A stretch of 64,000 nucleotides of DNA from IMGVR_UViG_3300019458_000020:124001-188000, one strand, 5' to 3'; positions 41,441-58,337 are shown, counted from the first letter of the stretch. Translations and numbers: made by a program. The notes: generated by a model from the sequence alone, not told the origin.

Positions 41441-41518
41441 TGGTGGTCGTGGTGAGATTCGAACTCACACTGTCAACGTTCTCAACGTTGTGCCTGCTGC
41501 CAGTTGGGCTACACGACC
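41441..41518 (-). tRNA. trnL: tRNA-Leu(GAG) with short (5-nt) variable loop
   Basis: CAACG TTGAGAA CGTTG ACAGT; CCA. Confidence 0.88.
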
Positions 41519-42394
41519 TTAACTAATCTTAACAACATGTAAATCTCTTATAGCTAATTTCGCATTAACATTGCTACATGTCCAATAAAAATTAACGGTA
41601 TTCAATATTCCTAAAGTAGTTTCTAACATTGACCTCACTGTAGTTCCGGACTGTCCTCCCAAATTAATACTTGAAGTAGTATCTACAAACCATTTTTGCC
41701 ATGTAGTTTGAGGACTTCCTTGACCAGAAAATAATCCTGGAAATACTGTGACAGATTGAAGACCTGCTAAAAATATGCCGCGAGGAATATTAAATTCCGA
41801 ACCTGTTGCCGTTCCACCAACAACATCTCTCCATGCTACAACACTCATTGAATAATTATTCGTTCCTCCCTTTTTAATTTCTACTCCATGACATTTCCAA
41901 GGATATCCAGCTAAACTAGCCGATGGGTGAGACGGTGAATAAACAGTATCATATCTTGGTACGTATGTTGTTGTTCCTGAACCACCAACGAATGACCCTG
42001 TAATGACTGTTTGTGTCCATTGATTTGAAGTCCATGCTTGTGTACTTCCGGTCGGCACAGTGGTTCCAGCTTGTACTCTTGTGAGAGTTACACTTTCGGA
42101 ATTACTTGGGTCAGCAACAATTGATAAACCCATACAATGTGCATCGCCAGCCACCTTGTAACCTCTATTTTGACTAGAAATTCCTGCAAAATATTTAAAA
42201 TTTGTGAGACTTTCACTAAAATTTGTGCCAACGATTGTTTCTCTCCAATACATTCTAATGTGATTCCAACTAGCAGAATCAGGAATAGTAAACATTCTAT
42301 AAAATTGTTCTCCGGGGTCTAACAAGAGAACGTCAACCGACGAACTTACAGAATTCGTTAATTCGTTCATTGCAAATAATGTAGTAACTCTCAT
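41519..42394 (-). CDS. Ser/Thr/Gly-rich putative virion protein (related to 2801-3937)
   Basis: FYRMF..P.SASWNHI...W; beta-rich; VNFYW. Confidence 0.5.
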   Translation of the reverse strand: MRVTTLFAMNELTNSVSSSVDVLLLDPGEQFYRMFTIPDSASWNHIRMYWRETIVGTNFSESLTNFKYFAGISSQNRGYKVAGDAHCMGLSIVADPSNSESVTLTRVQAGTTVPTGSTQAWTSNQWTQTVITGSFVGGSGTTTYVPRYDTVYSPSHPSASLAGYPWKCHGVEIKKGGTNNYSMSVVAWRDVVGGTATGSEFNIPRGIFLAGLQSVTVFPGLFSGQGSPQTTWQKWFVDTTSSINLGGQSGTTVRSMLETTLGILNTVNFYWTCSNVNAKLAIRDLHVVKIS

Positions 42395-42397
42395 ATC

Positions 42398-43225
42398 TTA
42401 AATAAATTTCATAACAAAATCGCTCACGTCCAGTGTTTCATAATATCGTGGCCAAGAGATAAATGCTCCGTCAAAATATCCGTTTGACGACCTACTAAGA
42501 GGCAGAGAATTTACCGAAGACGATGCATATCCTCTTGATATTAAAAATCCTGCTGCTGCTTCCCACGTCGAAAAATTCATTGTACTTGCCAAATATACAG
42601 AGGAAGATACATCACTAATAGAATCGGCCGTTTGTGGTGCTAAACATTGAAATGTCCACAAATCAGGAACTACGCTTCCTGTTCTCATTCTCACTATAAA
42701 CATATTCCTACTACCTTGTGGATAAGGAGTTACTGGAATTTTTTCCACAAATCCAGTACCATCCAGTTGAGAAGAACTATGACTTCCTGTTACCATTACT
42801 CTGATTGTGAACCTATTTTGAATATATGATTCCGTTATCGATGAACCAATACTTTGTGTTTGTTGCATCGACCAAGTATTTTCTCCGAATTGATTCTGAG
42901 CAGAAAATCCTACGGCAGCATAATGTTGTGGCTGTGCAGAACTACTAACACTTCCCGTTTGTCCAAATACAAACCCATCCGTTCTACAAACTCCTGCTAA
43001 AAATCTTGTAAAATCATTAGGAAATCCATTTGAATTGACTCTATTCCAGTTCCAAGCAGTAGTTATTCTCCATCTAAAACCGATCCACACTTCATTCCAT
43101 GAACCACTAGGAAAGAGAGAATCATTAAATTTTCTGACTAAAACCGATTGACCACATTTTAGGTAGGTATCATCAATAGAATTAACGGTTCTAGTATTTA
43201 CAGACGTAATGGATGAAGTAATCAT
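42398..43225 (-). CDS. Ser/Thr/Gly-rich putative virion protein (related to 2801-3937)
   Basis: LVRKF...SGSWNEVWIGFRWRI; FLAGVC..DGFVFG; DGAFISW. Confidence 0.5.
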   Translation of the reverse strand: MITSSITSVNTRTVNSIDDTYLKCGQSVLVRKFNDSLFPSGSWNEVWIGFRWRITTAWNWNRVNSNGFPNDFTRFLAGVCRTDGFVFGQTGSVSSSAQPQHYAAVGFSAQNQFGENTWSMQQTQSIGSSITESYIQNRFTIRVMVTGSHSSSQLDGTGFVEKIPVTPYPQGSRNMFIVRMRTGSVVPDLWTFQCLAPQTADSISDVSSSVYLASTMNFSTWEAAAGFLISRGYASSSVNSLPLSRSSNGYFDGAFISWPRYYETLDVSDFVMKFI

Positions 43226-43228
43226 ATA

Positions 43229-43642
43229 TTAATTTCCTCCCAGCGATTCTCCCCAACCCCAACCACCAAATGTTCCAACAGGATTACTTCCACTGCCATA
43301 AAAACTAAAATCATCTACGGCGATAATTAAAGGAAAATCTTCATTGGATGTAGGAATTCTGATTTGCCAAGCCGATTCCCAACCATATCCTCGGTTTGCT
43401 GGATCGGAACCAGATGTGTAAGCCTGAAAAGTATCGTATGGTCCGCCAACGTATGTAGAACCACTTAAATCGATTAATGAATCATCAATTACAGGAGCGG
43501 AACCTGTTTCTACTGAAGATGTTCCGGCACTAGCAACGTCACCGCCTGCCATTGCACCAGCATCATTAAAATCAGAATAACTAGGTATATTTACAAGATA
43601 CCTTTTCCCGTTCTGGATCTTTACCATTCGTATCACGAACAA
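43229..43642 (-). CDS. Small protein with two D-F-x-x-Y-x-SGS...G-x-GW motifs
   Basis: YDTFQAYTSGS...GYGW and DDFSFYGSGS...GGWGW; the same motif occurs in 2801-3937. Confidence 0.5.
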   Translation of the reverse strand: MFVIRMVKIQNGKRYLVNIPSYSDFNDAGAMAGGDVASAGTSSVETGSAPVIDDSLIDLSGSTYVGGPYDTFQAYTSGSDPANRGYGWESAWQIRIPTSNEDFPLIIAVDDFSFYGSGSNPVGTFGGWGWGESLGGN

Positions 43643-43682
43643 TACATATAAGAAGTGAAACGATTTGGAGTTTAAAAAAAAG

Positions 43683-43757
43683 TGGTACGGGTAGAAGGAT
43701 TTGAACCTCCGGCCTTTTCCGTGTAAAGGAACTGCTCTTCCACTGAGCTATACCCGC
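43683..43757 (-). tRNA. trnV: tRNA-Val(TAC)
   Basis: TT-TAC-AC; canonical arms; CCA. Confidence 0.93.
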
Positions 43758-43763
43758 ATAAAA

Positions 43764-43841
43764 TGGTCGGAAAGACAGGATTCGAACCTGCGACATCTTG
43801 CTCCCAAAGCAAGCGCTCTAGCCAAGCTGAGCTACTTTCCG
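43764..43841 (-). tRNA. trnP: tRNA-Pro(TGG)
   Basis: TT-TGG-GA; CGG acceptor; CCA. Confidence 0.93.
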
Positions 43842-43850
43842 ATATTAATA

Positions 43851-43879
43851 ACTATAGTTGGGTTACACGTAAATGTCAA
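43851..43879 (-). promoter_or_regulatory. Sigma70-like promoter TTGACA-17-TATAGT
   Basis: Direct read; just upstream of tRNA-Pro. Confidence 0.75.
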
Positions 43880-43992
43880 TCAAACATTTTTACTTGCCTT
43901 GTACTTTGGCAAACGCACTCACTCTCCATCATTCTTATTGGTGATCAATCCAATAGTTGTTCAGCATCGTGAGCCTGCTGACTATAGTTAAA

Positions 43993-44727
43993 TTAGAAAA
44001 AGTTTTTAGGAAATTTATGTGTTCTAGCGTAACGAAGAATAGTTAATCGAAATTTTTCCTTATCCTTTTCTTCTACTTGACCACAACCACAAGCGACTTC
44101 AGCATTAGACCAAGAATTAGATTCTAAAGAATTTCCATTATATTTCTTATCACGATAAATTTGTTCTCCATATTGAACAACCAATTTTTCGTCGAATCCA
44201 AGCGAACGTCTTCCTTCATTTTTTCTTTTTCTTGAAAGAGTTTGAAATCGTTTGATACGAGCTTCATAAGACCGGCATGTATCAAGAAGAGTATTGATTG
44301 TTTTTTCCTTTTCTTGACATTCTACACAACGATTCTTATAAATTTCTTTACAATCCTTACAATCCGCCGTTGGTGGGCGAATCGCTTTATATGTTGGGTG
44401 TTTCTGACACGTATTTATGTGCTCCTCGTCATTCAATTCATGAAGATTCTTCACCAAGACTTGTAACCATTGTTCATCTTCTTTAGAAATCGGTGCATCG
44501 GATAAGTATGTTACTCCGTATGGAACATTTTCACCACGTTTCCATGTATCCAAAACCATTTTACGAAATTTTGGTTTGACCTTCTTTAAATCTTTTTGTT
44601 GTAAACATTTTTTAACTGTAGTCGTGTCAGTATGACTATCCAACACTTCTTCCAAATGTTTTTTAGCATCCTCCATCCGATTCAATGCAAGTTGAATGTA
44701 ACCTTTATTCAAATCTACGTTTTTCAT
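43993..44727 (-). CDS. Hypothetical protein
   Basis: 244-aa ORF with C/H-rich segment C.KHPTY..IRPP...C..C. Confidence 0.6.
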   Translation of the reverse strand: MKNVDLNKGYIQLALNRMEDAKKHLEEVLDSHTDTTTVKKCLQQKDLKKVKPKFRKMVLDTWKRGENVPYGVTYLSDAPISKEDEQWLQVLVKNLHELNDEEHINTCQKHPTYKAIRPPTADCKDCKEIYKNRCVECQEKEKTINTLLDTCRSYEARIKRFQTLSRKRKNEGRRSLGFDEKLVVQYGEQIYRDKKYNGNSLESNSWSNAEVACGCGQVEEKDKEKFRLTILRYARTHKFPKNFF

Positions 44728-44990
44728 AATCTATTTTTTGGAAAATGTGTGTAAAATAATACAACTAACCAAGACAATCCTTCTACACCATAAACCGCAG
44801 CAATAATTGGGTCAAATCCGTGACTTAAAAATAAGTAACAATACAATAATATTACTCCCATGAATATTGGCCAAGAAGTAAGTTTTGGAATATAGGTGAA
44901 TCCCTGTTTCATTGCTTGAACAGCACTAGGTATTCCGGCCACAGCGAAACAACCACCCCCTAAAATTCCTAGTATAGATATTGTATTCAT
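44724..44990 (-). CDS. PQ-loop/SemiSWEET-like three-TM membrane protein
   Basis: LGILGGGCFAVAGIPSAVQAMK (PQ-like P-S), three hydrophobic segments. Confidence 0.55.
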   Translation of the reverse strand: MNTISILGILGGGCFAVAGIPSAVQAMKQGFTYIPKLTSWPIFMGVILLYCYLFLSHGFDPIIAAVYGVEGLSWLVVLFYTHFPKNRL

Positions 44991-44994
44991 AATT

Positions 44995-45465
44995 TCACCA
45001 CGTAAATTCTACGTATGTTAGATTTTCCATCCAACTACAATATTCAATACTATTACTTTCACTGTAGAGATATTCACCCATATTATCAGTCTTCATTCCT
45101 TTAACGAAGATTCTTGGAGAGAATTTTTTAAGTTCATCAACAATGGCTTTCATGTGTATAACATTGTCAGTAGAATATTCAGAGAGAAATGTCTTGTTGA
45201 ACTTCCCTCTATTATAAACGTTGCCGGTGAAATCTTTAGGATTATGGTAAAGACAAATTCGGTATCTATTTCTTCCTCTTCTAGCTGCCTCTTTGATTTG
45301 ATCCACATAAAACGAAACATCTTTCAGTTCTTTGATTTGTTCTCTCCTTGCGTTTCGTTCTTTAACTAAAGATTCTTTTTTCTTCTTAATAAGATTTAAT
45401 GTGATTCGTTTCTTGGAAGACGCGGTCAGATCTTGAATATCATTTAAGTTTGGTATTGTTTTCAT
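44995..45465 (-). CDS. Hypothetical protein
   Basis: ORF track; co-oriented. Confidence 0.6.
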   Translation of the reverse strand: MKTIPNLNDIQDLTASSKKRITLNLIKKKKESLVKERNARREQIKELKDVSFYVDQIKEAARRGRNRYRICLYHNPKDFTGNVYNRGKFNKTFLSEYSTDNVIHMKAIVDELKKFSPRIFVKGMKTDNMGEYLYSESNSIEYCSWMENLTYVEFTW

Positions 45466-45920
45466 ACTAAATCTTTCAATATGTCAGATAATTCTTCTTC
45501 TAAATCCACATATCTTTGAAATTCGTATTCACCGAAACCAAAACGTCGTTCTCTATCATCAGAAGACAGTGACAGACCGGGGGTTTTCAAAACTGCTCGC
45601 TGAGAATAATATTCTTCCTCAGGCGATTCATCAGAACCTCTCCACGTTCCGAACCAATCATCATATTTTAGAGAAAATACGAATATATCATTATGACCAT
45701 CTTTTCTTTTAATAGACACAACTCCCTTATTTACAGTGAGTGTTCCTAGTTTTACTGGTTGACCGTCAAGAGGAGATAAAATCTTGTTGATTGCGTGGCG
45801 AATTCGTTTTTCAAGTTCATTTCTACTTTTTTGAATTCGTTTCGACCTATTACGTTCTTCATCCATTGCATCTTGTTCCTTTTTGGATTTTTCTTTGGCT
45901 TTATCGAGAATGCTTTTCAT
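45462..45920 (-). CDS. Hypothetical protein
   Basis: ORF track; co-oriented. Confidence 0.6.
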   Translation of the reverse strand: MKSILDKAKEKSKKEQDAMDEERNRSKRIQKSRNELEKRIRHAINKILSPLDGQPVKLGTLTVNKGVVSIKRKDGHNDIFVFSLKYDDWFGTWRGSDESPEEEYYSQRAVLKTPGLSLSSDDRERRFGFGEYEFQRYVDLEEELSDILKDLV

Positions 45921-45965
45921 GTCCAGAAGATAATATAGAAATAGGGAAGGTCAAATTATAAAAAG

Positions 45966-46039
45966 TGGTGGGCAATAATGGATTCGAGCCAGTTTCTTGA
46001 GTATGTGACACTCACGTTTTGCCATTAAACTAATTGCCC
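45966..46039 (-). tRNA. trnV: tRNA-Val(CAC)
   Basis: TGAGT GTCACAT ACTCA; CCA. Confidence 0.82.
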
Positions 46040-46148
46040 ATGATTGTTGTGACGGAATTCCGTTATGTCACCGTCTCCTGCCTCGAATCTTATTAGACTT
46101 GCTATGGAACCGTGCTATTTTACGTCTTTTACACTAAACAACAAATTA

Positions 46149-46496
46149 TTAACATTTCAAACCATCGAAGTCATCCATTGCTTTCCAAAAAAGTTTTACG
46201 GATTCTTCGGTTTGATGTTTATCGATATATGCCGACCAACAATAATAACAATCATTATTGGGAGGATTTATCATATCATATTCATTATGTTTTTGGCAAT
46301 GAGCATTTTCACGTCGTAATCTTTTACAAGTTTCAAATTGTTGATGAACTTCTTCAGGAGTAGGTGGAGGAAGTTTTCTAAGAGCTTCCATTCTTTCAAT
46401 ATACCATTGTGGAGGTCCAATAACCTTTTTATCATCAAACATCGTATGGATTTCTCTTCCGTCTTCGGTGAATTCTCTTGGTTTTTGTTCACTCAT
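46149..46496 (-). CDS. Hypothetical protein (start reset to MSEQKPREF)
   Basis: The longer ORF overlaps tRNA-Ser(GCT); C..H and CYYC motifs. Confidence 0.5.
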   Translation of the reverse strand: MSEQKPREFTEDGREIHTMFDDKKVIGPPQWYIERMEALRKLPPPTPEEVHQQFETCKRLRRENAHCQKHNEYDMINPPNNDCYYCWSAYIDKHQTEESVKLFWKAMDDFDGLKC

Positions 46497-46508
46497 AACA
46501 TTAAAAAG

Positions 46509-46599
46509 TGGCGGAAGGCAGAGGTCCCGACCCTCAAGCTCAATTAAGGCTCCCACAGTTTAGCAAACTGGTCCGGTTCCCCGACACGGTTTACCTTCC
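46509..46599 (-). tRNA. trnS: tRNA-Ser(GCT), T-loop GTCGGGA
   Basis: TT-GCT-AA; long variable arm; CCA. Confidence 0.85.
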
Positions 46600-46604
46600 A
46601 TAAA

Positions 46605-46707
46605 TTTTGTTACCTACCGAGATTTGAACCTCGCCCAATGTTCGACGACATTATTTTTATACCGTTACTCTTCCCTTCGGAGTCTTTACGGGCCCTTATC
46701 GGTAACA
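46605..46707 (-). ncRNA. tRNA-like structured element (T-loop, 6-nt pseudo-anticodon loop, non-tRNA closing stem)
   Basis: TGTTACC/GGTAACA closing stem; AATGT-CGTCGA-ACATT; CGAG-GTTCAAAT-CTCG. Confidence 0.45.
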
Positions 46708-46713
46708 TTAAAA

Positions 46714-46801
46714 TGGCGGAAGAGTGAGGTCCCGCCCCTCACACCCGAAGGTGCATACTGATTTCAAGTCAGTTCCGGCACGCTTGTCCGGTTACTCTTC
46801 C
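46714..46801 (-). tRNA. trnS: tRNA-Ser(TGA), T-loop GGCGGGA
   Basis: CT-TGA-AA; long variable arm; CCA. Confidence 0.85.
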
Positions 46802-47049
46802 ATAGGACCGTATGGTCCAAAAAAATCTTTAGCAAAATTAACACCAAAACTACTCTTTGTCAATCCACCTTCTGGAGAAATAGCAATTAAATCGAATGGA
46901 AGATGTTCGGATAGAGGCAAAGCAATCTTTACATCTTTCTCAGTTAAGTCGGCAATGATCTGAGTCAATCCGATATCTCCTTTATCCTTAGTAATTACGT
47001 TCTTCACAAATTCAAAATCCAGAAATTTCCCAAGCATTATACAAACCAT
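46792..47049 (-). pseudogene. Truncated PD-(D/E)xK homing-endonuclease fragment (PDDEXK_5/I-Ssp6803I-like N-terminus)
   Basis: TKDKGDIG..IIADL......PLSEHLPFDLI; lacks the downstream Q-x-K catalytic motif. Confidence 0.55.
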
Positions 47050-47172
47050 CCATTGATTCTTGTTCTGCTTGTCTTATTTCATCAAGTTCTTCTTCCGACA
47101 TATTACATCGGCAAGAACCGTGTTCAAATCCACAATCATTACAAATAATTGGAGACTCAACATAAAAATCAC

Positions 47173-47370: not shown

Positions 47371-47490
47371 AGATAAATATCAATTAAAAACCATTTTACA
47401 AACACAGTTGATACACAAAATCCAGAAAATTGATAAAACAATCAAAACTAATGCGATGCTCATTCCGATTATAAAATTTCTCATGACTTA

Positions 47491-47519
47491 ATTATAATCT
47501 TGATTCATCCGTTTGTCAA
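47491..47519 (-). promoter_or_regulatory. Consensus sigma70 promoter TTGACA-17-TATAAT
   Basis: Direct read. Confidence 0.85.
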
Positions 47520-52242: not shown

Positions 52243-52250
52243 ATAAAATT

Positions 52251-53015
52251 TTATTCTTTTGAAACATCGAATGTTTCATTGAAAGTTTTTATGGCATTTT
52301 TATACCCGGCCTTCGATTCATCGAATTTGTCGGCAGTATATTGCCAATTCCAATATAAATCTTTTGGAGTTTGGAATCCATAAAAATGATGAACTTGTTT
52401 TTGGGTTTCCAAAACATCTTTTCCGTTCCAATTCTGTCCAATCAAAATCATTCCGGAGTCAATATCCTTTAGAAGATTCGATTCGCCTAATGTTGAGTGA
52501 CGATTTTCTAACCAACAGAGTCTTTCAATTAATTTTTGATAAATGCTGTTTGTCTGTCCCCAACGAACAGAGACAAAAAATACTATTGCATCCGATTCAA
52601 ATAAAGGTTTTGAAATTTTCCAAAGTTCATCGGACTTATTATTGATATTACACCAACATCTATGATGTCCGGAAGGATTTTTTTCTTTATCTTTTAATAC
52701 AGAATCTTTAGTTCCACAGTGATTTCCATATTTACTTGAAACATTTCCTTCACAAACAAAAATACTTAACTTGCTTACATCAATAAATTGAGATTTGTCT
52801 TTTCCTAATCGTTCATGAACTAATTTAGCCAATTTAGTAGATTTGGCTTCATCATCTTTATGTCCTTCAAATCTATTAGATGTTGAAATCAACAAAACTT
52901 GTTTTTTGTTTTTGAGATAATCGATGGTTTTTTCCAAAAGAAGTGAATTCTTTTCTGCATCTTTATCACTGGATGCTAGTTTTCTTTCTATTAATAGGTC
53001 TTTTAGAAAAATCAT
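52251..53015 (-). CDS. Flavodoxin-like / NADPH-dependent FMN reductase family protein
   Basis: VLLISTSNR..S.KL; I..CEGNVS; DELWKI...LFESDAIVF..SVRWG...KLIERL. Confidence 0.75.
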   Translation of the reverse strand: MIFLKDLLIERKLASSDKDAEKNSLLLEKTIDYLKNKKQVLLISTSNRFEGHKDDEAKSTKLAKLVHERLGKDKSQFIDVSKLSIFVCEGNVSSKYGNHCGTKDSVLKDKEKNPSGHHRCWCNINNKSDELWKISKPLFESDAIVFFVSVRWGQTNSIYQKLIERLCWLENRHSTLGESNLLKDIDSGMILIGQNWNGKDVLETQKQVHHFYGFQTPKDLYWNWQYTADKFDESKAGYKNAIKTFNETFDVSKE

Positions 53016-53059
53016 ACAGATATAAATATCAAACAGATTTTATAATTATTGATTTAAAT

Positions 53060-53134
53060 TGGCCCGGACAGTCGGTAACGCTCCGACCTATATGGGGTTT
53101 CAATCTATCACTAATCTATCTCAGTTATGTCCTG
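53060..53134 (-). tRNA. trnF: Degenerate tRNA-Phe(GAA) (mismatched anticodon stem)
   Basis: TT-GAA-AC loop; two A.C mismatches in the stem; AGCGTTA T-loop; CCA. Confidence 0.55.
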
Positions 53135-53138
53135 AAAA

Positions 53139-53214
53139 TGGTCCCCATACCCGGATTCGAACCGGGCTCTCTCGGTCTTCATCCGAGGGCTATCACCAGA
53201 TTAGCTAAATGGGG
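53139..53214 (-). tRNA. trnF: tRNA-Phe(GAA)
   Basis: CTCGG ATGAAGA CCGAG; CCA. Confidence 0.8.
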
Positions 53215-53223
53215 ATAATTAAA

Positions 53224-53298
53224 TGGCGAACGTGAAGGGAATCGAACCCTCCTAATCGCAGAGACAGTGCGATCGATGACCCAGCCTCTTCCACGTCC
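53224..53298 (-). tRNA. trnD: tRNA-Asp(GTC)
   Basis: TCGCA CTGTCTC TGCGA; G73; CCA. Confidence 0.85.
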
Positions 53299-53410
53299 AT
53301 TAAATTAAATTTCTGGATTTCACAAAGAGTAATTAAACGTAGTACTCCATCTAATTACTGGTTCCGCACGTTGGCGTCTATCAGGTTCTTGTAGTATTAC
53401 CTTACTTCAT

Positions 53411-53481
53411 CAACTCTTTGGAATCGAACCAAATCCTCAACGGCAAATCGTTGACCAATGCTACCATTACACTATTAATTG
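53411..53481 (-). pseudogene. Pseudo-tRNA (D- and T-arms intact, 6-nt anticodon loop, decayed acceptor)
   Basis: TAGTGTAATGGTAGCAT; CAACG ATTTGC CGTTG; TTTGG TTCGATT CCAAA; no CCA. Confidence 0.6.
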
Positions 53482-53681
53482 CCTTCGGTATAATACACAA
53501 TAAAAATCATCCCAGAGTATCGTTGCAACTAGCTTTAAGAAAGTCGAATTTGACACCGTTACAAGTCGCCATTCAAAAGGAGTAATGAATGTCTGAACAG
53601 AGTTTAGCTCCACGTTCTCCGGGGGAAAATTTACAAGGATTTCACTACGATTCTAATGATCACTCGAATCTTAATATTCCA

Positions 53682-53756
53682 TAACAACGACCGGAGTTGC
53701 ACTCGGTACTGTCGGCACTGGGCCGATATGCTTACTACATTACACCACAGTTGTTA
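53682..53756 (-). pseudogene. Pseudo-tRNA (Trp/Leu-like, collapsed anticodon loop)
   Basis: TCGGC CCAGT GCCGA; TGCAACT T-loop; no CCA. Confidence 0.55.
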
Positions 53757-53775
53757 ATGTCTATCTTGTATAAAT

Positions 53776-53850
53776 TGGAGGCCCGTGTTGGAATCGAACC
53801 AACATATATCGTTTTGCAGACGACCGCTTGGGCCACTCAGCCAACGAGCC
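53776..53850 (-). tRNA. trnC: tRNA-Cys(GCA)
   Basis: CT-GCA-AA; U73; CCA. Confidence 0.93.
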
Positions 53851-53857
53851 TTAAAAA

Positions 53858-53931
53858 TGGCGAGCGTAAACGGTTCTGCCCCGTTGCATTCCGATAGACA
53901 GTCGGATAGGCTTCTATTACATCATACGCCC
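53858..53931 (-). tRNA. trnD: tRNA-Asp(GTC), T-loop GGCAGAA
   Basis: TCCGA CTGTCTA TCGGA; CCA. Confidence 0.82.
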
Positions 53932-54246
53932 GTTATTATAAATTTTATCTATAAGATATTTGAACCGTTCCACAGTGAAATCCCACTTCATTAAATTGAC
54001 ATGTTTATGAAGCCATTGAACATTCTCTCTGGTATATCCCTTAGAACTATCAATTCTATCCATCGAGTCGGTTCTATCAAACTTATGAACTTTTGAACTA
54101 AATTGTATGGGTTCTCCGGATAATGCACACTTTCTATCTTGTTTTAAGAAGAGATTCCACAAAAATTTTGTATCAAGGTTTTTGGAAAAAGGAATATTGA
54201 CACAATATATTCTTTTAAATTGATTAATTTTTTCTTTATTGTTCAA
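53917..54246 (-). CDS. His-Me finger (HNH-like) endonuclease, possibly N-terminally truncated
   Basis: KQDRKCALSG...SMDRIDSSKGY...NVQWLHKHVNLMK. Confidence 0.7.
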   Translation of the reverse strand: MNNKEKINQFKRIYCVNIPFSKNLDTKFLWNLFLKQDRKCALSGEPIQFSSKVHKFDRTDSMDRIDSSKGYTRENVQWLHKHVNLMKWDFTVERFKYLIDKIYNNGRMM

Positions 54247-54282
54247 GTGTGACTTGAACTATTCATCTGAATCTAAACAAAA

Positions 54283-54361
54283 TGGTGCGTGTGGAAGGAC
54301 TTTCACCGACACTCTTTCCTCCATTACAGGGAGGCGCCTCTTATATTTGGGCTACACACGG
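54283..54361 (-). tRNA. trnY: Atypical tRNA-Tyr(GTA), short variable loop, weak T-stem
   Basis: CCTCC CTGTAAT GGAGG; TGAAAGT T-loop; CCA. Confidence 0.65.
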
Positions 54362-54506
54362 CATAAATTTCATTTTCACATCGTATCGTCAGACGATTCA
54401 ATGTGAAAACGTAAAAATCCGTCAAGGCTGCTAGTATTCAGCAATATTAACCAAATACTTGCCTTATTTAAAGTGTCCTACACTCACCTTGAGTTTTACG
54501 TAAAAT

Positions 54507-54580
54507 TGGTAGGAGAGGCCGGTTACGCTCCAGCGCCAAGACTTTGTAAGAGTCCCAATCTACTATTAATATACTCCCCC
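54507..54580 (-). tRNA. trnV: tRNA-Val(TAC), T-loop AGCGTAA
   Basis: GGACT CTTACAA AGTCT; CCA. Confidence 0.8.
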
Positions 54581-54589
54581 ATTGAAAAC

Positions 54590-54654
54590 AAGAATCAGAA
54601 ATGACTCCATATCTCATACGACTATCAGGAACTAAACCTGTTCCACTGATTCTT
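54590..54654 (-). repeat. Repeated structured element, copy A (YGGAA-hairpin-TAGTCGTATGAG-N5-GAGTCAT)
   Basis: Closing stem AAGAATCAG/CTGATTCTT; same core as 56791-56849. Confidence 0.7.
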
Positions 54655-54662
54655 TAACAAAT

Positions 54663-54740
54663 TGGTAGCACCTGACGGATTCGAACCCTCACTATCTAGT
54701 TTCTGAGACTAGCGACTCCTACCAGTTGGTCTAAGGTGCC
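54663..54740 (-). tRNA. trnL: tRNA-Leu(CAG), short variable loop
   Basis: CTAGT CTCAGAA ACTAG ATAGT; CCA. Confidence 0.88.
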
Positions 54741-54747
54741 ATGAAAT

Positions 54748-54832
54748 TGGTAGTCGTGGTCCGATTCGAACGGGCAAAGAATACTACATTTTGAGTGTAG
54801 CGGTTGTTCCAGTTTCCCTTATCCACACGACC
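54748..54832 (-). tRNA. trnL: tRNA-Leu(CAA), enlarged D-loop, 8-nt variable loop
   Basis: CTACA CTCAAAA TGTAG; CCA. Confidence 0.8.
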
Positions 54833-54900
54833 ATAATGTTCAGGATATTGACTATGTACACGAATACGTGAACATGACTGGTTTCCTGAACATGAAAAAT

Positions 54901-54978
54901 TGGTACCTGCAGTGGGATTCGAACCTACACTACACAAATTTTAAGTTTGTTGACTGCTTCCAATTGGTCTATACAGGC
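54901..54978 (-). tRNA. trnL: tRNA-Leu(TAA), short variable loop
   Basis: ACAAA CTTAAAA TTTGT GTAGT; CCA. Confidence 0.88.
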
Positions 54979-54985
54979 ATTAAAT

Positions 54986-55071
54986 TGGTCCCCCATGTAG
55001 GTATCGATCCTACCCTGCCCGTAGGCGTTTGTTTTACAGACAAACCTTCGTCCTTAGAAGTATAATGAGGG
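54986..55071 (-). tRNA. trnY: tRNA-Tyr(GTA), T-loop ATCGATA
   Basis: TTTGT CTGTAAA ACAAA; GCCTACGGGC variable arm; CCA. Confidence 0.85.
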
Positions 55072-55072
55072 G

Positions 55073-55264
55073 TTAACCTCTGCATTTTTTACAGAGAAAT
55101 TGTTTTCCATTAAATTCCATAAAATCTTTTCCATCATGTTCATTAATGATTGGTTTGTAATCATGACAACAATCACATTCTTCAACGAGTGAATAATTGG
55201 CATAATATATGAATTCCGCGTCGGTCAAACCTTCTGCTAATTTTTCGTGTGTGTTTATTATCAT
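55073..55264 (-). CDS. Small Zn-ribbon hypothetical protein
   Basis: CDCC...CKKC. Confidence 0.5.
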   Translation of the reverse strand: MIINTHEKLAEGLTDAEFIYYANYSLVEECDCCHDYKPIINEHDGKDFMEFNGKQFLCKKCRG

Positions 55265-55464
55265 AAATCGGCGCCGTTGAATCTTATTTCAGAATCGTCT
55301 CCTTCTTTTATTATCTATGGATGAGCCACAATCACCACAGACTCACAGACATGGAGCAATAACTATGTCCACCTTACAACGAGCAGTGACGCCCTAATTG
55401 CTATATGCTTACGATTGATTACGTAATACCGTAAAGGCCCAGAAACATAGTCCACGGCATAAAT

Positions 55465-55554
55465 TGGTGCGCCGGGTGGGATTTGAACCCACAGTGGAGG
55501 ATTTCCCTCATTAGGTTAAAAGCCTAATAGTTTCAGCCGTTTACTTACCGACAT
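55465..55554 (-). tRNA. trnK: tRNA-Lys(TTT) with long variable arm
   Basis: TTAGG CTTTTAA CCTAA; GAGG-GAAAT-CCTC extra arm; CCA. Confidence 0.82.
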
Positions 55555-55953
55555 GAAAAAACTGACTGGCCCACAAGATAGCAGGCACTTAGGTTGACTC
55601 ACGAATTGTCTTAACCTGTCTTAGAAATGATAATTACGGGTAAAGGCATTTCACCTTTACATCTTCTCTATTAAATGAAATATGCATCTTCCAAATAACT
55701 TTGATTTACTATCCACCATCATCCGGCGGGACTCGAACCCAGCTGTTATTCCGGCGCAATGCGGAACGGCACTCCCTTAGCCATCGGAGCTTTTAGGATA
55801 ACATGACTCTCTTGCATCACCATCAACACTATCATTTTTTAAATTGGTCAACATCATCACCGCCTGAGAGCATGAACCTTATACGGTCTAAGAGGGTCAC
55901 TGACATGCCTCGAATGTTACTCATACTACTTCTGCCGCAGCTGTTGACTAAAT

Positions 55954-56028
55954 TGGTCAGGTAGATGGGACTTGCACCCATACAGTTTCCTTCACAGGGA
56001 AAGATGCTACTATTACATCACGTACCTG
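55954..56028 (-). tRNA. trnH: tRNA-His(GTG) lacking G-1:C73
   Basis: TTTCC CTGTGAA GGAAA; A73 with T encoded at -1; TGCAAGT T-loop; CCA. Confidence 0.8.
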
Positions 56029-56388
56029 ATTTAAGATAAAAATGATATGGGTCGATACCTGACATGAATCTCCACCATCCTAAGATGGATATTTAATGAG
56101 TGAGTCATTTCTTAGATTACCATATCCTACTCGTAACTGCGTAGTTTATCCTAAAAATACAAGATACCGTTTTGGTTTGTTCATTAGACAAGTTTTTTTG
56201 GTTGCTGTTTGGTATCTTAAATCTTTATAGTTTCAAACCAATAATTTAAATTTTCAATTTCTTTTTTCTTAACTATTAAAAGTTTTTTTGGAAATTGTTT
56301 CCATTTTGCATCATCTTTAGGAGTTTGATACCCCTTTACTTCAATGTATATTTCTAGTAGAGCAAACAATTGATTTTTCTTAGGAATT

Positions 56389-56465
56389 TGGTGGTAGATG
56401 CAGGATTCGAACCTGCTACCTCAATCTTATCAAGATTTTGCTCTACCATGATGAGCTAATCTACC
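56389..56465 (-). tRNA. trnI: tRNA-Ile(GAT)
   Basis: TT-GAT-AA; canonical; CCA. Confidence 0.92.
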
Positions 56466-56601
56466 ATTAAAATTGCCGGTTACTCTCTCCCGGAAGTCAT
56501 ACCACTTTCCTTTGAATCGCCACGGCGACTTTTTTCACCGAATGTTTAGGAACTGACAGCACCCCCGTCACAAACATTGATTGGTTGTAGGTATCACAAA
56601 T

Positions 56602-56676
56602 TGGTGGAGCCACGGGGAATCGAACCCCGATCTATGGATTGCAAATCTACCGTATTACCATTATACAGATGACCCC
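56602..56676 (-). tRNA. trnA: tRNA-Ala(TGC)
   Basis: TT-TGC-AA; G3.U70; CCA. Confidence 0.9.
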
Positions 56677-56710
56677 ATGAAAAATTGGCTGTTCATATAT
56701 GAACAATAAA

Positions 56711-56787
56711 TGGTTGGGTAGGGGAGAATCGAACTCCCGACCTCTACAATGTCAATGTAGCATTCTTCCGTGCTGAACTACCACCCA
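56711..56787 (-). tRNA. trnV: tRNA-Val(GAC)
   Basis: CTACA TTGACAT TGTAG; CCA. Confidence 0.9.
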
Positions 56788-56790
56788 ATA

Positions 56791-56849
56791 AATGACAACA
56801 TGACTCTATCACTCATACGACTAGCGGGAATGAACCCGTTCCGGTCATT
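56791..56849 (-). repeat. Repeated structured element, copy B
   Basis: AATGAC CGGAA CGGG TTCATT CCCG C TAGTCGTATGAG TGATA GAGTCAT GTT GTCATT. Confidence 0.7.
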
Positions 56850-56856
56850 TTTAAAC

Positions 56857-56932
56857 TGGCTCCCTCTGATGGAATCGAACCACCGCTTTCAGGTTCAAAG
56901 CCTGAGTTGCTGCCATTACAAACCAAGAGGGA
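56857..56932 (-). tRNA. trnQ: tRNA-Gln(TTG)
   Basis: TCAGG CTTTGAA CCTGA; CCA. Confidence 0.9.
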
Positions 56933-57100
56933 ATAAATTAATGTTCTGAGATTTCACAAACGTTCCATCCTACTTTGCTAGCAATTTTGGATGTCTTTTC
57001 AGTAAACCGTCGGCACCATCATCTCCGGAGCGAAACCCGGTGTTCTTTATTTAAACTATTCAGTCCTTGAGACTGACGATGTTCTCCTGGTTATTTAAAA

Positions 57101-57191
57101 TGGTCGGAGTGGTGGGATTCGAACCCACAAGGTCATAAAAGACGCCGAGTTCCAAGCTCGGGTGGCTACCAAGTTACCTCCCTACACTCTG
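57101..57191 (-). tRNA. trnP: tRNA-Pro(TGG) with long variable arm and enlarged D-loop
   Basis: CCGAG CTTGGAA CTCGG; GTC-TTTTAT-GAC extra arm; CCA. Confidence 0.75.
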
Positions 57192-57198
57192 AAAAATC

Positions 57199-57276
57199 TG
57201 GTCTCCCCGGTCGGATTTGAACCGACATTATTCTTGACCCCAAATCAAGTGCCATACCAAGTTAGGCGACGAAGAG
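57199..57276 (-). tRNA. trnP: tRNA-Pro(TGG)
   Basis: CTTGA TTTGGGG TCAAG; CCA. Confidence 0.8.
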
Positions 57277-57286
57277 AATTAAAAAT

Positions 57287-57447
57287 TGGCTCCAGCATCG
57301 GGACTCGAACCCAAACTAACAGCTATAAGGCCGTCGTGCTGCCTACTAGAAATGCGGAATCTCAACGGTTACTACATCATTTTTATTACGTATTCAAAAC
57401 GCCTTCATCCGTTTACTACACCCGACTAGCAATTACACTATACCGGA
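57287..57447 (-). tRNA. Interrupted tRNA (Asn/Gln-like body) with ~87-nt D-loop insertion and 6-nt anticodon loop
   Basis: TCCGGTA/TGCTGGA-G-CCA acceptor; GTGTAATT[insert]GGCAGCAC; ACGGC CTTATA GCTGT; TTGGG TTCGAGT CCCGA. Confidence 0.65.
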
Positions 57448-57456
57448 ATTTAAAAT

Positions 57457-57530
57457 TGGCTGGGACGGCTCGAATCGCACGAGCATCATGCGGGTAACAG
57501 CCGCAGGTCCTACTGTTGAACGACATCCCA
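57457..57530 (-). tRNA. trnN: tRNA-Asn(GTT), T-loop TGCGATT
   Basis: TGCGG CTGTTAC CCGCA; CCA. Confidence 0.85.
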
Positions 57531-57531
57531 A

Positions 57532-57963
57532 TTAAATTGTAATTAATCCTGCATGAACTTCTCCGTGACAATTCGAACACAGAAGAGAACATTTATTTAC
57601 TTCTTTCTTTAAGGATTCAAAAGATTTTGATTTTGAAGTAATTCCAAAACTTTTCTGTTTAGGATCACGATGATGGAAAATTAGACTGGCCATACATCGG
57701 CTGTAACCACATTTTTCACATTTACCTCCTTTATATGTTACTAATCTAATTTTTATTTTACGTCTCCACGTCACCACTTTTCCGCTTCTTCGTTGTCTTC
57801 TTTCTTCATCAGATAATCTAGCTCTACGAACATGAAGAACTTTAATTAATGTTCTTTTACACCAGCCAAACTTTTTGGTAATATCATCTAAAGTATTACC
57901 TTTATTGTAAAAAGATTGGAGAATTTTTATTTCGTTTTCAGTAGGTGGTACACTTCTTTTCAT
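57532..57963 (-). CDS. HNH endonuclease with N-terminal HTH (paralogue of 49785-50366)
   Basis: YKGGKCEKCGY...FHHRDP...KEVNKCSLLCSNCHGEVH. Confidence 0.88.
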   Translation of the reverse strand: MKRSVPPTENEIKILQSFYNKGNTLDDITKKFGWCKRTLIKVLHVRRARLSDEERRQRRSGKVVTWRRKIKIRLVTYKGGKCEKCGYSRCMASLIFHHRDPKQKSFGITSKSKSFESLKKEVNKCSLLCSNCHGEVHAGLITI

Positions 57964-58005
57964 TTATCTAATATACCACAAAAGTTGATTAAATCAACTA
58001 GAAAT

Positions 58006-58093
58006 TGGCTCCAGGAGATGGATTCGAACCACCGGCGGGCTATTCACCTACAGATTAACAGTCTGTCGTCTGCTACCACTCGACTACCCTGGA
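58006..58093 (-). tRNA. trnN: tRNA-Asn(GTT) with long variable region
   Basis: ACAGA CTGTTAA TCTGT; 16-nt extra region; TCC/GGA-G-CCA. Confidence 0.85.
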
Positions 58094-58106
58094 ATAAAAA
58101 ATTGAA

Positions 58107-58169
58107 TTGATGGAATAGGAATTGAACCTATATGTCGGGGCCCCAACGTTTACCAAAATCACCCATCAA
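58107..58169 (-). pseudogene. Anticodon-less tRNA-like element
   Basis: TTGATGG/CCATCAA stem; ATAGG TTCAATT CCTAT; anticodon arm collapsed to GTTGG-GGCC-CCGAC. Confidence 0.5.
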
Positions 58170-58248
58170 ATTTAATGGAGGTAGCGATCCTAATATGGGG
58201 ACTAATCAAACGGACTATATTCCATACTCACGCTGATTCCTCTAAAAT

Positions 58249-58337
58249 TGGTGGTGCCGGTGGGAGTCGAACCCACGGTGGATTATTAATCGTCGGATTA
58301 AAAGTCCGGTGCTTTCGGCCTCTAAGCAAACGACACC
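58249..58337 (-). tRNA. trnK: tRNA-Lys(TTT) with long variable arm
   Basis: CCGGA CTTTTAA TCCGA; GATT-AAT-AATC extra arm; CCA. Confidence 0.85.

What the first reader, a model, noticed from the sequence alone, without database searches (positions are those of the whole stretch)
41441..58337. Variable-arm class swapping: short-arm Leu/Tyr and long-arm Lys, Asn, Pro, Met
Seen: all four Leu tRNAs have only 5-8 nt variable loops and Tyr 54283 is short. Lys-TTT (55465, 58249), Asn (58006), Pro (57101) and Met (39101) carry long extra arms. Established: in bacteria long arms are normally restricted to Leu, Ser, Tyr and Sec, and Lys(UUU), Asn and Met tRNAs are classic targets of anticodon nucleases (PrrC, colicin E5, VapC). 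Inference: remodelled bodies may keep synthetase recognition while escaping defence nucleases.
Basis: partly seen in the sequence, partly recalled or inferred. Interest (0 to 1): 0.6.

Follow-up and report, generated by a model that had tools for sequence, protein, structure and literature searches.

The report
Phage tRNAs with swapped variable arms
A 250-kb cave-metagenome jumbo phage carries leucine tRNAs that lack the usual long extra arm and lysine, asparagine, proline and methionine tRNAs that have gained one. These belong to conserved tRNA families found in many phages, phiKZ among them, so the swap is real and widespread, but its purpose is untested.

Summary
Three Leu tRNAs (GAG, CAG, UAA) are solid short-arm (type I) tRNAs. 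Lys-UUU 55465, Asn 58006, Pro 57101 and Met 39101 carry real extra hairpins. Lys-UUU 58249 has only an enlarged, unstructured 16-nt loop. 'Tyr 54283' is a borderline tRNA-like gene, and a normal long-arm Tyr lies at 54986-55071. The same genome also holds two longer-arm Leu tRNAs outside the window.

None of this is unique to this phage.
- The Leu D-arm motif hit at least 119 viral contigs (GC 29-69%), always with a Leu anticodon and a short loop. It also hit chromosomes, mostly high-GC, Actinomycetota by title.
- phiKZ's annotated 89-nt tRNA-Asn is a homologue of the long-arm Asn.
- Related jumbo phages carry orthologues of the long-arm Pro, Met and Lys tRNAs with compensatory stem changes.

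The pattern follows synthetase identity rules. Ser (102/102) and Tyr (23/24) keep the arm. Leu loses it but keeps A14, A15-U48, G18G19 and A73. Arms are added mainly to tRNAs whose synthetases read the anticodon.

They are most likely functional cognate tRNAs charged by host enzymes. Escape from tRNA-cutting defences is plausible: a tRNA-repair cassette lies next to the array, and extra arms are enriched among tRNAs that read ANN codons. It is unproven. I found no paper describing the swap.

The parts
41441..41518 (-). tRNA-Leu(GAG), type I: 5-nt variable loop ACAGU, 3-bp D stem with a long D loop, A73, encoded CCA
   Evidence: ARAGORN 115.0, Rfam 57.6 bits. Aligns with 45 viral type I Leu tRNAs, and 20/20 pairs show compensatory changes.
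54663..54740 (-). tRNA-Leu(CAG), type I, variable loop AUAGU
   Evidence: ARAGORN 115.1, Rfam 49.8 bits. Partial matches (73-91% of the query at 75-85% identity) lie under annotated tRNA-Leu features in cultured Gordonia, Streptomyces and Pseudomonas phages.
54901..54978 (-). tRNA-Leu(UAA), type I, variable loop GUAGU. The genome holds the same anticodon again in an 89-nt longer-arm form outside the window.
   Evidence: ARAGORN 109.8, Rfam 48.2 bits.
54748..54832 (-). Atypical Leu(CAA) tRNA-like gene: 7-bp acceptor stem, anticodon arm, normal T arm, 8-nt variable loop, 24-nt D region with no clear stem, A73, CCA
   Evidence: Missed by ARAGORN and Rfam. Found from the CCA+ATTT motif, folded. 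Homologues in L133 and L114 show compensatory changes.
54283..54362 (-). Doubtful Tyr(GUA)-like gene without a long arm
   Evidence: Rfam 28.0 bits, below the cut-off of 29. The minimum-energy fold is not a cloverleaf, z = -0.72. No homologue in the held loci.
54986..55071 (-). tRNA-Tyr(GUA), ordinary class II with a 3-bp variable arm, and an unusual T loop AUCGAUA
   Evidence: ARAGORN 93.7 at a lowered threshold. The minimum-energy fold is a five-arm cloverleaf, z = -2.43.
55465..55554 (-). tRNA-Lys(UUU) with an extra variable arm (4-bp stem, 4 unpaired bases on its 3' side), 3-bp D stem, A73, A1xC72
   Evidence: ARAGORN 113.1, Rfam 47.9 bits. The minimum-energy fold shows the arm. A strain variant in run X2 turns U2.G71 into C2-G71.
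57101..57191 (-). tRNA-Pro(UGG) with an extra 3-bp variable arm, C1-G72, A73
   Evidence: ARAGORN 104.2; Rfam gives only a 25.6-bit tRNA-Sec match. Orthologues at L334:15941-16030 (88% identity) and L331:10998-11086 (80%) show 3 compensatory pairs and keep the arm stem.
57199..57276 (-). tRNA-Pro(UGG), ordinary short-loop copy next to the long-arm copy. A third copy lies at 43764-43841.
   Evidence: ARAGORN, Rfam 49.0 bits.
57457..57530 (-). tRNA-Asn(GUU), short-loop copy with C38 in the anticodon loop and T loop UGCGAUU
   Evidence: ARAGORN 106.7, Rfam 47.6 bits.
58006..58093 (-). tRNA-Asn(GUU) with an extra variable arm (16-nt region), 3-bp D stem, U1-A72, G73
   Evidence: ARAGORN 118.0, Rfam 52.7 bits. 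79% identical across the arm to phiKZ tRNA-Asn, which is annotated at 89 nt. The arm stem is kept with covariation in 6 sequences.
58249..58337 (-). tRNA-Lys(UUU) with an enlarged 16-nt A/U-rich variable region and no stable hairpin
   Evidence: ARAGORN 113.8, Rfam 38.9 bits. The variable region alone does not fold. The orthologue in G002 has an 11-nt unstructured region.
58352..58430 (-). tRNA-Lys(CUU) with an 8-nt variable loop
   Evidence: ARAGORN 106.2, Rfam 44.0 bits.
39101..39190 (-). CAU-anticodon tRNA (Met, fMet or Ile2 not resolved) with a 6-bp variable arm capped by GAAA, T loop UGUAACU and an unpaired 1-72 position
   Evidence: Missed by ARAGORN and Rfam. The minimum-energy fold is a five-arm cloverleaf, z = -2.11. 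Homologues in L081, L120, L114 and L159 give 9 compensatory pairs.
37125..38207 (-). RNA ligase, part of a putative tRNA healing-and-sealing cassette at the edge of the array
   Evidence: phrog_968 'RNA ligase', E = 1.3e-43.
39328..39780 (-). P-loop kinase similar to polynucleotide kinase
   Evidence: phrog_505 'polynucleotide kinase', E = 5.3e-9.
39805..40392 (-). HD-domain phosphohydrolase
   Evidence: Pfam PF01966, E = 3.8e-13.
57532..57963 (-). HNH endonuclease between the two Asn tRNAs. A second one lies at 49785-50366.
   Evidence: phrog_2255, E = 6.5e-27 and 3.3e-26.

Best explanation
These are working phage tRNA genes from conserved, horizontally spread structural families. They are not errors or pseudogenes. 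Most likely each is transcribed, trimmed to its encoded CCA end, charged by the host synthetase that matches its anticodon, and used to translate phage genes.

The change of class is possible because the variable region is not read by the synthetases concerned. LeuRS recognises the tertiary core and A73, which the short-arm Leu tRNAs keep intact. The Lys, Asn, Pro and Met enzymes mainly recognise the anticodon and the discriminator base, so a hairpin in the variable region is tolerated. Ser and Tyr tRNAs, whose enzymes use the arm, keep it.

Shown here: conservation, covariation, the identity marks and the wide distribution. Inferred: charging and use in translation.

My best guess for why these forms persist, at about 0.35 probability, is that a body shape unlike the host's makes the phage copies poor substrates for host tRNA-cutting or tRNA-modifying defences while they stay usable in translation.
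For: 1. Real genes. All carry an encoded CCA.
2. Type I Leu family. All 86 ARAGORN tRNAs carrying the motif, in the first 80 contigs analysed (GC 29-69%), have Leu anticodons and are 75-80 nt long. In a 48-sequence alignment 20/20 pairs show compensatory changes. U8, A14, A15, G19 and A73 are 48/48, U48 is 47/48 and G18 is 46/48.
3. Long-arm orthologues. Pro occurs in G003 and G002 with 3 compensatory pairs and a conserved arm. The Met family has five members with 9 compensatory pairs. The Asn family includes phiKZ's tRNA-Asn, annotated at 89 nt, and its arm stem covaries.
4. Identity logic in 1229 unique phage tRNAs. Ser is 102/102 long, Tyr 23/24 long and Leu 51/269 long. Among tRNAs expected to be class I, 36 of 830 are long.
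5. Arm geometry. The extra arms mostly have 3-4-bp stems with 3-6 unpaired bases on the 3' side. tRNA-Ser has 0-1, type II Leu has 2 and Tyr has 3.
6. Sole copies. In 37 of 46 cases the long-arm tRNA is the only copy of that anticodon seen in its locus, phiKZ included.
7. Expression of relatives. phiKZ tRNAs as a group are expressed and sediment with ribosomal fractions (PMC8545117).
8. For the defence reading. An RNA ligase, kinase and HD cassette lies beside the array. Extra arms are enriched in tRNAs with U36: 26/304 against 10/526, odds ratio 4.8, p = 1e-5. PARIS AriB cuts Lys-UUU, Thr-UGU and Asn-GUU at positions 40/41, near where the arm emerges (PMC12409363). The genome holds the same anticodon in two body forms: Leu-UAA, Asn-GUU and Pro-UGG.
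Against: - There is no expression, charging or cleavage data for this phage. Only two DNA runs hold it, and none is RNA.
- The sampled contigs were chosen for carrying type I Leu, and the enrichment test is not corrected for shared ancestry. Without Ile-UAU it weakens to an odds ratio of 2.9, p = 0.01.
- Published escapes from tRNA nucleases work through point changes in the anticodon stem-loop, not through the variable arm (PMC10264068, PMC12409363).
- Fan et al. state that E. coli LeuRS charges only type II tRNA-Leu (PMC6614811), so charging of type I Leu by an unknown low-GC host is an assumption.
- Lys, Asn and Pro synthetases are class II enzymes that approach the tRNA from the variable-loop side (my own knowledge), so an arm there could hinder charging.
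- Pro 57101 and Met 39101 fall below the Rfam threshold.
- Lys 58249 has no real arm.
Confidence: 0.6

Rival explanations
1. Neutral tolerance. Arms are gained or lost by small insertions and deletions in fast-evolving, mobile tRNA arrays. They persist only because the cognate synthetases, EF-Tu and the ribosome do not care. They bring no benefit.
For: - Extra arms appear on many different isotypes (Cys, Trp, His, Gln, Phe, Val, Arg) with varied lengths.
- Lys 58249 and its G002 orthologue have unstructured regions of different length.
- Related phages differ in which tRNAs are affected.
- HNH endonucleases lie inside the array.
Against: - The families are old and conserved across contigs with very different GC content.
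- The Leu variable loop is almost fixed as ACAGU-like, and U48 is 47/48.
- 80% of the extra regions fold as hairpins, and 11 of 36 hairpins carry a GAAA loop.
- Arm stems are kept or covary in the Pro, Asn and Met families.
- The long-arm Ile-UAU family keeps a specific loop sequence.
Confidence: 0.25
2. Decoys or inhibitors. The remodelled tRNAs are not mainly used in translation. They bind and soak up host tRNA nucleases or toxins, or they serve another non-coding role.
For: The PARIS study raises the possibility that overexpressed viral tRNAs inhibit AriB (PMC12409363). This genome has many further tRNA-like genes with aberrant T loops that look poorly suited to translation.
Against: - The main cases keep 7-nt anticodon loops with U33, cognate discriminator bases, standard T arms and CCA.
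- They are often the only phage copy of that anticodon.
Confidence: 0.08
3. Recoding or deliberate mistranslation. The long arm makes SerRS, or LeuRS or TyrRS, charge tRNAs carrying Lys, Asn or Pro anticodons, as with allo-tRNAs or nematode nev-tRNAs.
For: - SerRS and LeuRS ignore the anticodon (established; PMC7609411, PMC3333845).
- Asn 58006 has G73, and one possible fold leaves at most one unpaired base 3' of the arm, which resembles tRNA-Ser.
Against: - Discriminator bases match the anticodon identity (A73 for Lys and Pro, G73 with U1-A72 for Asn), and G2:C71 is absent.
- Most arms have 3-4-bp stems with 3-6 unpaired 3' bases, unlike tRNA-Ser.
- By homology with phiKZ, the Asn arm is followed by 4 unpaired bases.
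- The acceptor/T configuration is 7/5, not 8/4 or 9/3.
- Putting Ser at Lys, Asn and Pro codons would damage the phage's own proteins, and long ORFs read normally under the standard code.
Confidence: 0.04
4. Prediction artefacts or decaying pseudogenes.
For: Tyr 54283 scores below threshold, does not fold as a cloverleaf and has no homologue. Pro 57101 and Met 39101 are below the Rfam threshold.
Against: - Two independent programs agree on three Leu, two Lys and the Asn tRNAs.
- The sub-threshold Pro, Met and Leu-CAA genes have orthologues with compensatory changes.
- The assembly is matched without a difference by a 166-kb contig, although that contig may be from the source sample.
Confidence: 0.03

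Closest known systems
Type I tRNA-Leu(CAA) of Streptomyces coelicolor (Fan et al. 2019, PMC6614811)
   Same: It has a Leu anticodon and a 5-nt variable loop (ACAGC there, ACAGU-like here). It coexists with type II Leu tRNAs and is charged by a single LeuRS. The window's D-arm motif hits chromosomal loci that are mostly GC >= 60% (106 of 115), Actinomycetota by title, with CAA the commonest anticodon.
   Different: Here the family is phage-borne and carries all six Leu anticodons. It occurs in contigs of GC 29-69%, this one at 35.8%. In Streptomyces, C74 rather than A73 was found to matter for charging. In the phage family A73 is invariant.
tRNA-Asn of Pseudomonas phage phiKZ (PHIKZ_t02, annotated at 89 nt)
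   Same: It is 79% identical to window 58006-58093 over positions 12-74, which include the extra arm. It shares the GUU anticodon, G73 and a 3-bp D stem with a nearly identical D loop. An HNH endonuclease gene follows it.
   Different: The phiKZ arm is a 3-bp stem with a GAAA loop, while the window's has a 7-nt loop. The two HNH proteins are not detectably related. I found no paper that comments on the extra arm in phiKZ.
Phage T5 tRNA-Lys(UUU), Thr(UGU) and Asn(GUU) variants that defeat PARIS AriB (PMC11464382, PMC12409363)
   Same: They are phage copies of the same isoacceptors that differ from the host's and restore translation under tRNA-cleaving defence.
   Different: T5 escapes through point substitutions at positions 39 and 41 of the anticodon stem. 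No change of variable arm is reported. Resistance of the window's tRNAs is untested.
allo-tRNAs (Mukai et al. 2017, PMC5389517) and nematode nev-tRNAs (PMC3333845)
   Same: They are tRNAs with a long variable arm and an anticodon for an amino acid other than Leu, Ser or Tyr.
   Different: Those have Ser or Leu identity and so mistranslate or recode, and allo-tRNAs have 8/4 or 9/3 acceptor/T stems. The window's tRNAs have 7/5 stems, discriminator bases matching the anticodon, and arm geometry unlike tRNA-Ser.
Short-arm tRNA-Leu of animal mitochondria
   Same: A short variable loop on a Leu tRNA.
   Different: That tRNA is charged by a dedicated mitochondrial LeuRS in a separate compartment (PMC6614811). 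No synthetase gene of families PF00133, PF00152 or PF00587 was found in this phage record, which is 74% complete.

Membership tests
Type I (short variable loop) tRNA-Leu | Leu anticodon with a variable loop of 4-5 nt | tested here: met
   GAG, CAG and UAA tRNAs have 5-nt loops. The CAA-like gene has 8 nt.
Type I (short variable loop) tRNA-Leu | LeuRS determinants A73, U8-A14, A15-U48 and G18G19 (list in PMC6614811) | tested here: met
   All are present in the three window tRNAs. In 48 family members they are invariant, except G18 at 46/48 and U48 at 47/48.
Type I (short variable loop) tRNA-Leu | Leucylation by the host LeuRS | not testable with these tools
   The host is unknown (cave metagenome). 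This needs an aminoacylation assay.
Class II (long variable arm) tRNA architecture | Variable region of 10 nt or more that forms a stem-loop | tested here: met
   Lys 55465, Asn 58006, Pro 57101 and Met 39101 meet it. Lys 58249 meets the length (16 nt) but not the stem.
tRNA-Ser identity (SerRS substrate) | Arm with a 4-6-bp stem and 0-1 unpaired base on its 3' side, as seen in 108 phage tRNA-Ser, plus G73 and G2:C71 | tested here: not met
   Lys and Pro have A73 and 3-4 unpaired 3' bases. Asn has G73 but C2-G71, and its arm geometry is ambiguous.
allo-tRNA | 8/4 or 9/3 acceptor/T-stem configuration | tested here: not met
   ARAGORN structures show 7-bp acceptor stems and 5-bp T stems.
Nuclease-evading phage tRNA variants (T5 type) | Resistance to a defined host tRNA nuclease while still supporting translation | not testable with these tools
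   Only context is available: a repair cassette and enrichment among U36 tRNAs.
Phage tRNA healing-and-sealing system (T4 Pnkp/Rnl1 type) | RNA ligase together with a polynucleotide kinase and a phosphoesterase | tested here: inconclusive
   The RNA ligase match is strong (phrog_968, 1.3e-43). The kinase match is weak (phrog_505, 5.3e-9). An HD domain stands where T4 has its phosphatase. No activity was tested.

The most novel reading that the evidence does not exclude
Changing the variable-arm class is a general, selected counter-defence strategy of tRNA-rich phages. Phages delete the arm from Leu tRNAs and add hairpins to anticodon-read tRNAs, above all those that decode ANN codons. This makes their tRNAs structurally invisible to host nucleases and toxins that read tRNA shape, while host synthetases still charge them. 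The rule that predicts which tRNAs can be remodelled is the synthetase identity code.
Probability: 0.3. Interest if true: 0.8.

Novelty: new variant of a known kind. Interest (0 to 1): 0.6.

Why it matters
- If the remodelled tRNAs are charged as their anticodons say, then LeuRS enzymes from many bacterial phyla accept armless Leu tRNAs. Lys, Asn, Pro, Met and Ile enzymes would likewise tolerate a hairpin in the variable region. That corrects a textbook rule for phages and is useful for designing orthogonal or tagged tRNAs.
- It would add a second, structural route by which phage tRNAs may escape tRNA-targeting immunity, beyond the anticodon-loop point mutations already described.
- It can be tested in a tractable system, because phiKZ's only tRNA-Asn is of the long-arm kind.
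- For annotation, variable-arm length cannot be used to infer isotype in phage genomes. Standard tRNA finders also miss several conserved members, such as Met 39101 and Leu-CAA 54748.

Tried and rejected
- Relatives through the 254-aa protein 52251-53015. It has 206 relatives in IMG/VR, but the 80 loci fetched hold no tRNA at all, so the gene is not syntenic with the array.
- Relatives through the 203-aa protein 59848-60459: none found.
- Megablast of 41000-59000 against cultured phages: only short tRNA-Pro matches.
- ARAGORN at 80% threshold over the whole genome gave 189 calls, mostly noise. I kept only those ending in CCA with a score of 88 or more.
- Origin of the long-arm tRNAs. Body-only alignment places Asn, Lys, Met and Pro weakly nearest to short-loop tRNAs of the same amino acid, but phiKZ Asn is nearest to Ser, Leu and Tyr. 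Insertion of a hairpin versus an anticodon shift of a class II body is therefore undecided.
- A shared mobile cassette of tRNA-Asn plus HNH with phiKZ: the HNH proteins are not significantly similar, E = 0.035.
- Phage-encoded synthetases: no match to PF00133, PF00152 or PF00587. PF09334 (MetRS) was not searched.
- RNA evidence: no RNA run holds the stretch. The laid contigs show only DNA.
- A chromosomal control for arm frequencies: the bacterial loci I held contain too few non-Leu tRNAs to be useful.
- Literature: six searches and six papers read. None describes phage type I tRNA-Leu or long-arm Lys, Asn, Pro or Met tRNAs. Subscription journals are not covered.

Full report
**What the region is**

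The window is bases 124001-188000 of a single 250,813-bp viral record with GC 35.8%. CheckV rates the record 74% complete. Two cave-metagenome DNA runs hold it. Baseplate, RNA ligase and HNH genes mark it as a tailed jumbo phage.

From about 36 kb to 62 kb the minus strand carries a loose array of tRNA genes between small ORFs. ARAGORN tRNAs in the window and 41 in the genome. Rfam in the window. Every gene encodes its CCA end, and 30 of 47 are followed by ATTT or TTTT. Scanning for that motif shows about 15 more tRNA-like genes that both programs miss.

**Checking the observation**

- Leu-GAG (41441-41518), Leu-CAG (54663-54740) and Leu-UAA (54901-54978) are 75 nt plus CCA. They have 5-nt variable loops, a 3-bp D stem with a long D loop, and A73. 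Rfam scores are 48-58 bits.
- The fourth Leu (CAA, 54748-54832) is atypical, with an 8-nt loop and an odd D region. It is conserved in two other viral contigs with compensatory changes.
- Lys-UUU 55465-55554, Asn 58006-58093 and Pro 57101-57191 have extra hairpins of 3-4 bp.
- The CAU tRNA at 39101-39190 folds as a five-arm cloverleaf with a 6-bp arm capped by GAAA.
- Lys-UUU 58249-58337 has a 16-nt A/U-rich variable region that does not form a hairpin. It can instead pair with the tRNA's own anticodon loop.
- 'Tyr 54283' scores 28.0 bits against a cut-off of 29, does not fold as a cloverleaf and has no homologue in the loci I held. A normal class II Tyr lies at 54986-55071.
- Outside the window the same genome has Leu-UAG (84 nt) and Leu-UAA (89 nt) with 12- and 14-nt variable regions. 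The phage therefore holds short-loop and longer-arm Leu tRNAs, and holds the UAA anticodon in both forms.

**The short-arm Leu tRNAs belong to a large family**

- In the first 80 of these contigs, which I analysed (GC 29-69%), all 86 ARAGORN tRNAs carrying the pattern have one of the six Leu anticodons and are 75-80 nt long.
- Across 127 tRNA-bearing loci I collected 218 unique type I Leu tRNAs. The commonest variable loop is ACAGU, and 93% have A73.
- In a 48-sequence alignment all 20 helix pairs show compensatory changes. U8, A14, A15, G19 and A73 are invariant, U48 is 47/48 and G18 is 46/48.
- Those conserved bases are the LeuRS determinants listed for E. coli in PMC6614811.
- Cultured Pseudomonas, Gordonia and Streptomyces phages carry tRNA-Leu genes that match the window's Leu-CAG. 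The two in the Pseudomonas phage are annotated at 74 and 75 nt.
- In bacterial genomes the same pattern is found mostly in loci of GC 60% or more (106 of 115), Actinomycetota by title. The usual anticodon there is CAA. This matches the known chromosomal type I tRNA-Leu(CAA) of Streptomyces. The low-GC hits sit in dense tRNA arrays that look phage-derived.

**The long-arm tRNAs are also conserved**

Related jumbo phages were found through the RNA ligase, at 53-56% protein identity.
- G003 and G002 carry orthologues of the long-arm Pro, at 88% and 80% identity. They show three compensatory pairs and keep the arm stem.
- G002 has a 91-nt long-arm Asn beside a short one, and an orthologue of Lys 58249 with an 11-nt unstructured region.
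- The CAU tRNA has four homologues, including one in the closest relative, L081. Together they give nine compensatory pairs, a conserved arm and an always unpaired 1-72 position.
- The long-arm Asn is 79% identical, across the arm, to phiKZ's tRNA-Asn, which is annotated at 89 nt. In a six-member alignment the arm stem is kept with covariation.

**A survey of phage tRNAs**

The sample is 1229 unique tRNAs from 121 viral contigs.

| Group | With a variable region of 9 nt or more |
|---|---|
| Ser | 102 of 102 |
| Tyr | 23 of 24 |
| Leu (sample was chosen for type I Leu) | 51 of 269 |
| tRNAs expected to be class I | 36 of 830 (4.3%), in 26 contigs |

- The long-arm class I cases include Ile-UAU (11 of 23), Lys, Asn, Met, Thr, Pro, His and others.
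- Eighty percent of these regions fold as hairpins, and 11 of 36 hairpins have a GAAA loop.
- They are enriched among tRNAs with U36: 26/304 against 10/526, odds ratio 4.8, p = 1e-5. Without Ile-UAU the odds ratio is 2.9, p = 0.01. The test is not corrected for shared ancestry.
- Arm geometry separates the groups. The number of unpaired bases 3' of the stem is mostly 0-1 in Ser, 2 in type II Leu, 3 in Tyr, and 3-6 in the extra arms, which also have short stems.
- In 37 of 46 cases the long-arm tRNA is the only copy of its anticodon in the locus.

**How it most likely works**

The pattern follows the synthetase identity rules. The arm is kept where the enzyme uses it (Ser, Tyr). It is lost where the enzyme reads the core and A73 (Leu). 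It is added where the enzyme reads the anticodon (Lys, Asn, Pro, Met, Ile). The long-arm tRNAs keep cognate marks: A73 for Lys, C1-G72 and A73 for Pro, U1-A72 and G73 for Asn (which marks are cognate is my own knowledge).

No synthetase gene of three Pfam families was found in the record, so host enzymes must charge these tRNAs. I therefore read them as functional cognate tRNAs, with confidence 0.6. phiKZ tRNAs as a group are expressed and sediment with ribosomal fractions (PMC8545117).

**Why the forms persist is open**

- An RNA ligase, a polynucleotide-kinase-like protein and an HD phosphohydrolase lie at 37-40 kb, at the edge of the array. This recalls the T4 repair of tRNA-Lys after PrrC cleavage (my own knowledge).
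- tRNAs with U36 include the targets of PrrC and of PARIS AriB. AriB cuts at positions 40/41, next to where the arm emerges (PMC12409363).
- The genome holds several anticodons in two body forms.

Against it:
- Known escapes are point mutations in the anticodon stem-loop (PMC10264068, PMC12409363).
- No cleavage data exist for any of these tRNAs.
- The enrichment statistic is weak.

I put defence escape at about 0.35, neutral tolerance at 0.25, decoys at 0.08, recoding at 0.04 and artefact at 0.03 for the main genes.

**Novelty**

Type I tRNA-Leu is known in Streptomyces, and these phage genes are routinely annotated as tRNA-Leu or tRNA-Asn. Six literature searches and six papers read turned up no description of phage type I Leu or of long-arm Lys, Asn, Pro or Met tRNAs. 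Subscription journals were not searched. I rate the finding a new variant of a known kind, with moderate to high interest.

Noticed in passing
window 36000-62000, minus strand; e.g. 52078-52154, 53858-53931, 46714-46800, 36137-36225, 50504-50580: About 15 further tRNA-like genes end in CCA plus (A)TTT but are missed or scored low by ARAGORN and Rfam. Many have non-standard T loops (AGCGUUA, GGCAGAA, GGCGGGA). They include apparent Gly-UCC, Asp-GUC, Ser-UGA and Ser-CGA genes, and the Ser ones keep a long arm.
   Followed up: partly
window 39209-39284, 50423-50496, 55954-56028, 57457-57530, 58530-58606; genome 192038-192121: Six tRNAs have a T loop UGCRANU, with G where the universal U55 normally stands. 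The same variant occurs in 25 of 1235 tRNAs in the other viral loci.
   Followed up: partly
all tRNA genes of the genome: The encoded CCA is followed by ATTT in 22 and by TTTT in 8 of 47 tRNAs. This may be a processing or transcription signal.
   Followed up: no
genome 194949-195024 (outside the window, about 7 kb beyond its end); L332:8639-8714; L334:1814-1888: An amber-suppressor tRNA (anticodon CUA) is conserved in this phage and in both related jumbo phages. I did not check whether TAG is read as a sense codon in some genes.
   Followed up: no
L083-L089, L093, L106, L114, L159, L163, L175, L204, L207, L336:1666-1760: A phage family of 90-95-nt tRNA-Ile(UAU) has a long variable arm whose loop keeps a CUAGAUU-like sequence. 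A CAU tRNA with an extra arm often lies next to it.
   Followed up: partly
window 37125-40392: RNA ligase, a polynucleotide-kinase-like protein and an HD phosphohydrolase lie together among the first tRNAs of the array. This is a possible tRNA repair cassette.
   Followed up: partly
window 52251-53015: This 254-aa protein has over 200 relatives at 65-73% identity in IMG/VR. Their contigs show no tRNA genes nearby, so the gene travels apart from the array. It matches no Pfam family.
   Followed up: no
window 55553: The second metagenome run carries a near-identical strain. Its single difference in Lys 55465 changes U2.G71 to C2-G71 and so keeps the acceptor stem paired.
   Followed up: yes
window 58249-58337: The enlarged variable region of this Lys-UUU tRNA is complementary to its own anticodon loop. 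The minimum-energy fold pairs the two instead of forming the anticodon arm.
   Followed up: no
L331:10998-11086: The G002 orthologue of the long-arm Pro tRNA has C where the universal U33 normally stands in the anticodon loop.
   Followed up: no
window 48205-49071 and 51374-51832: A radical-SAM / Fe-S protein (phrog_27142, E = 5.5e-97) and a nucleoside deoxyribosyltransferase-like protein lie inside the tRNA array. A role in tRNA or nucleotide modification is possible.
   Followed up: no
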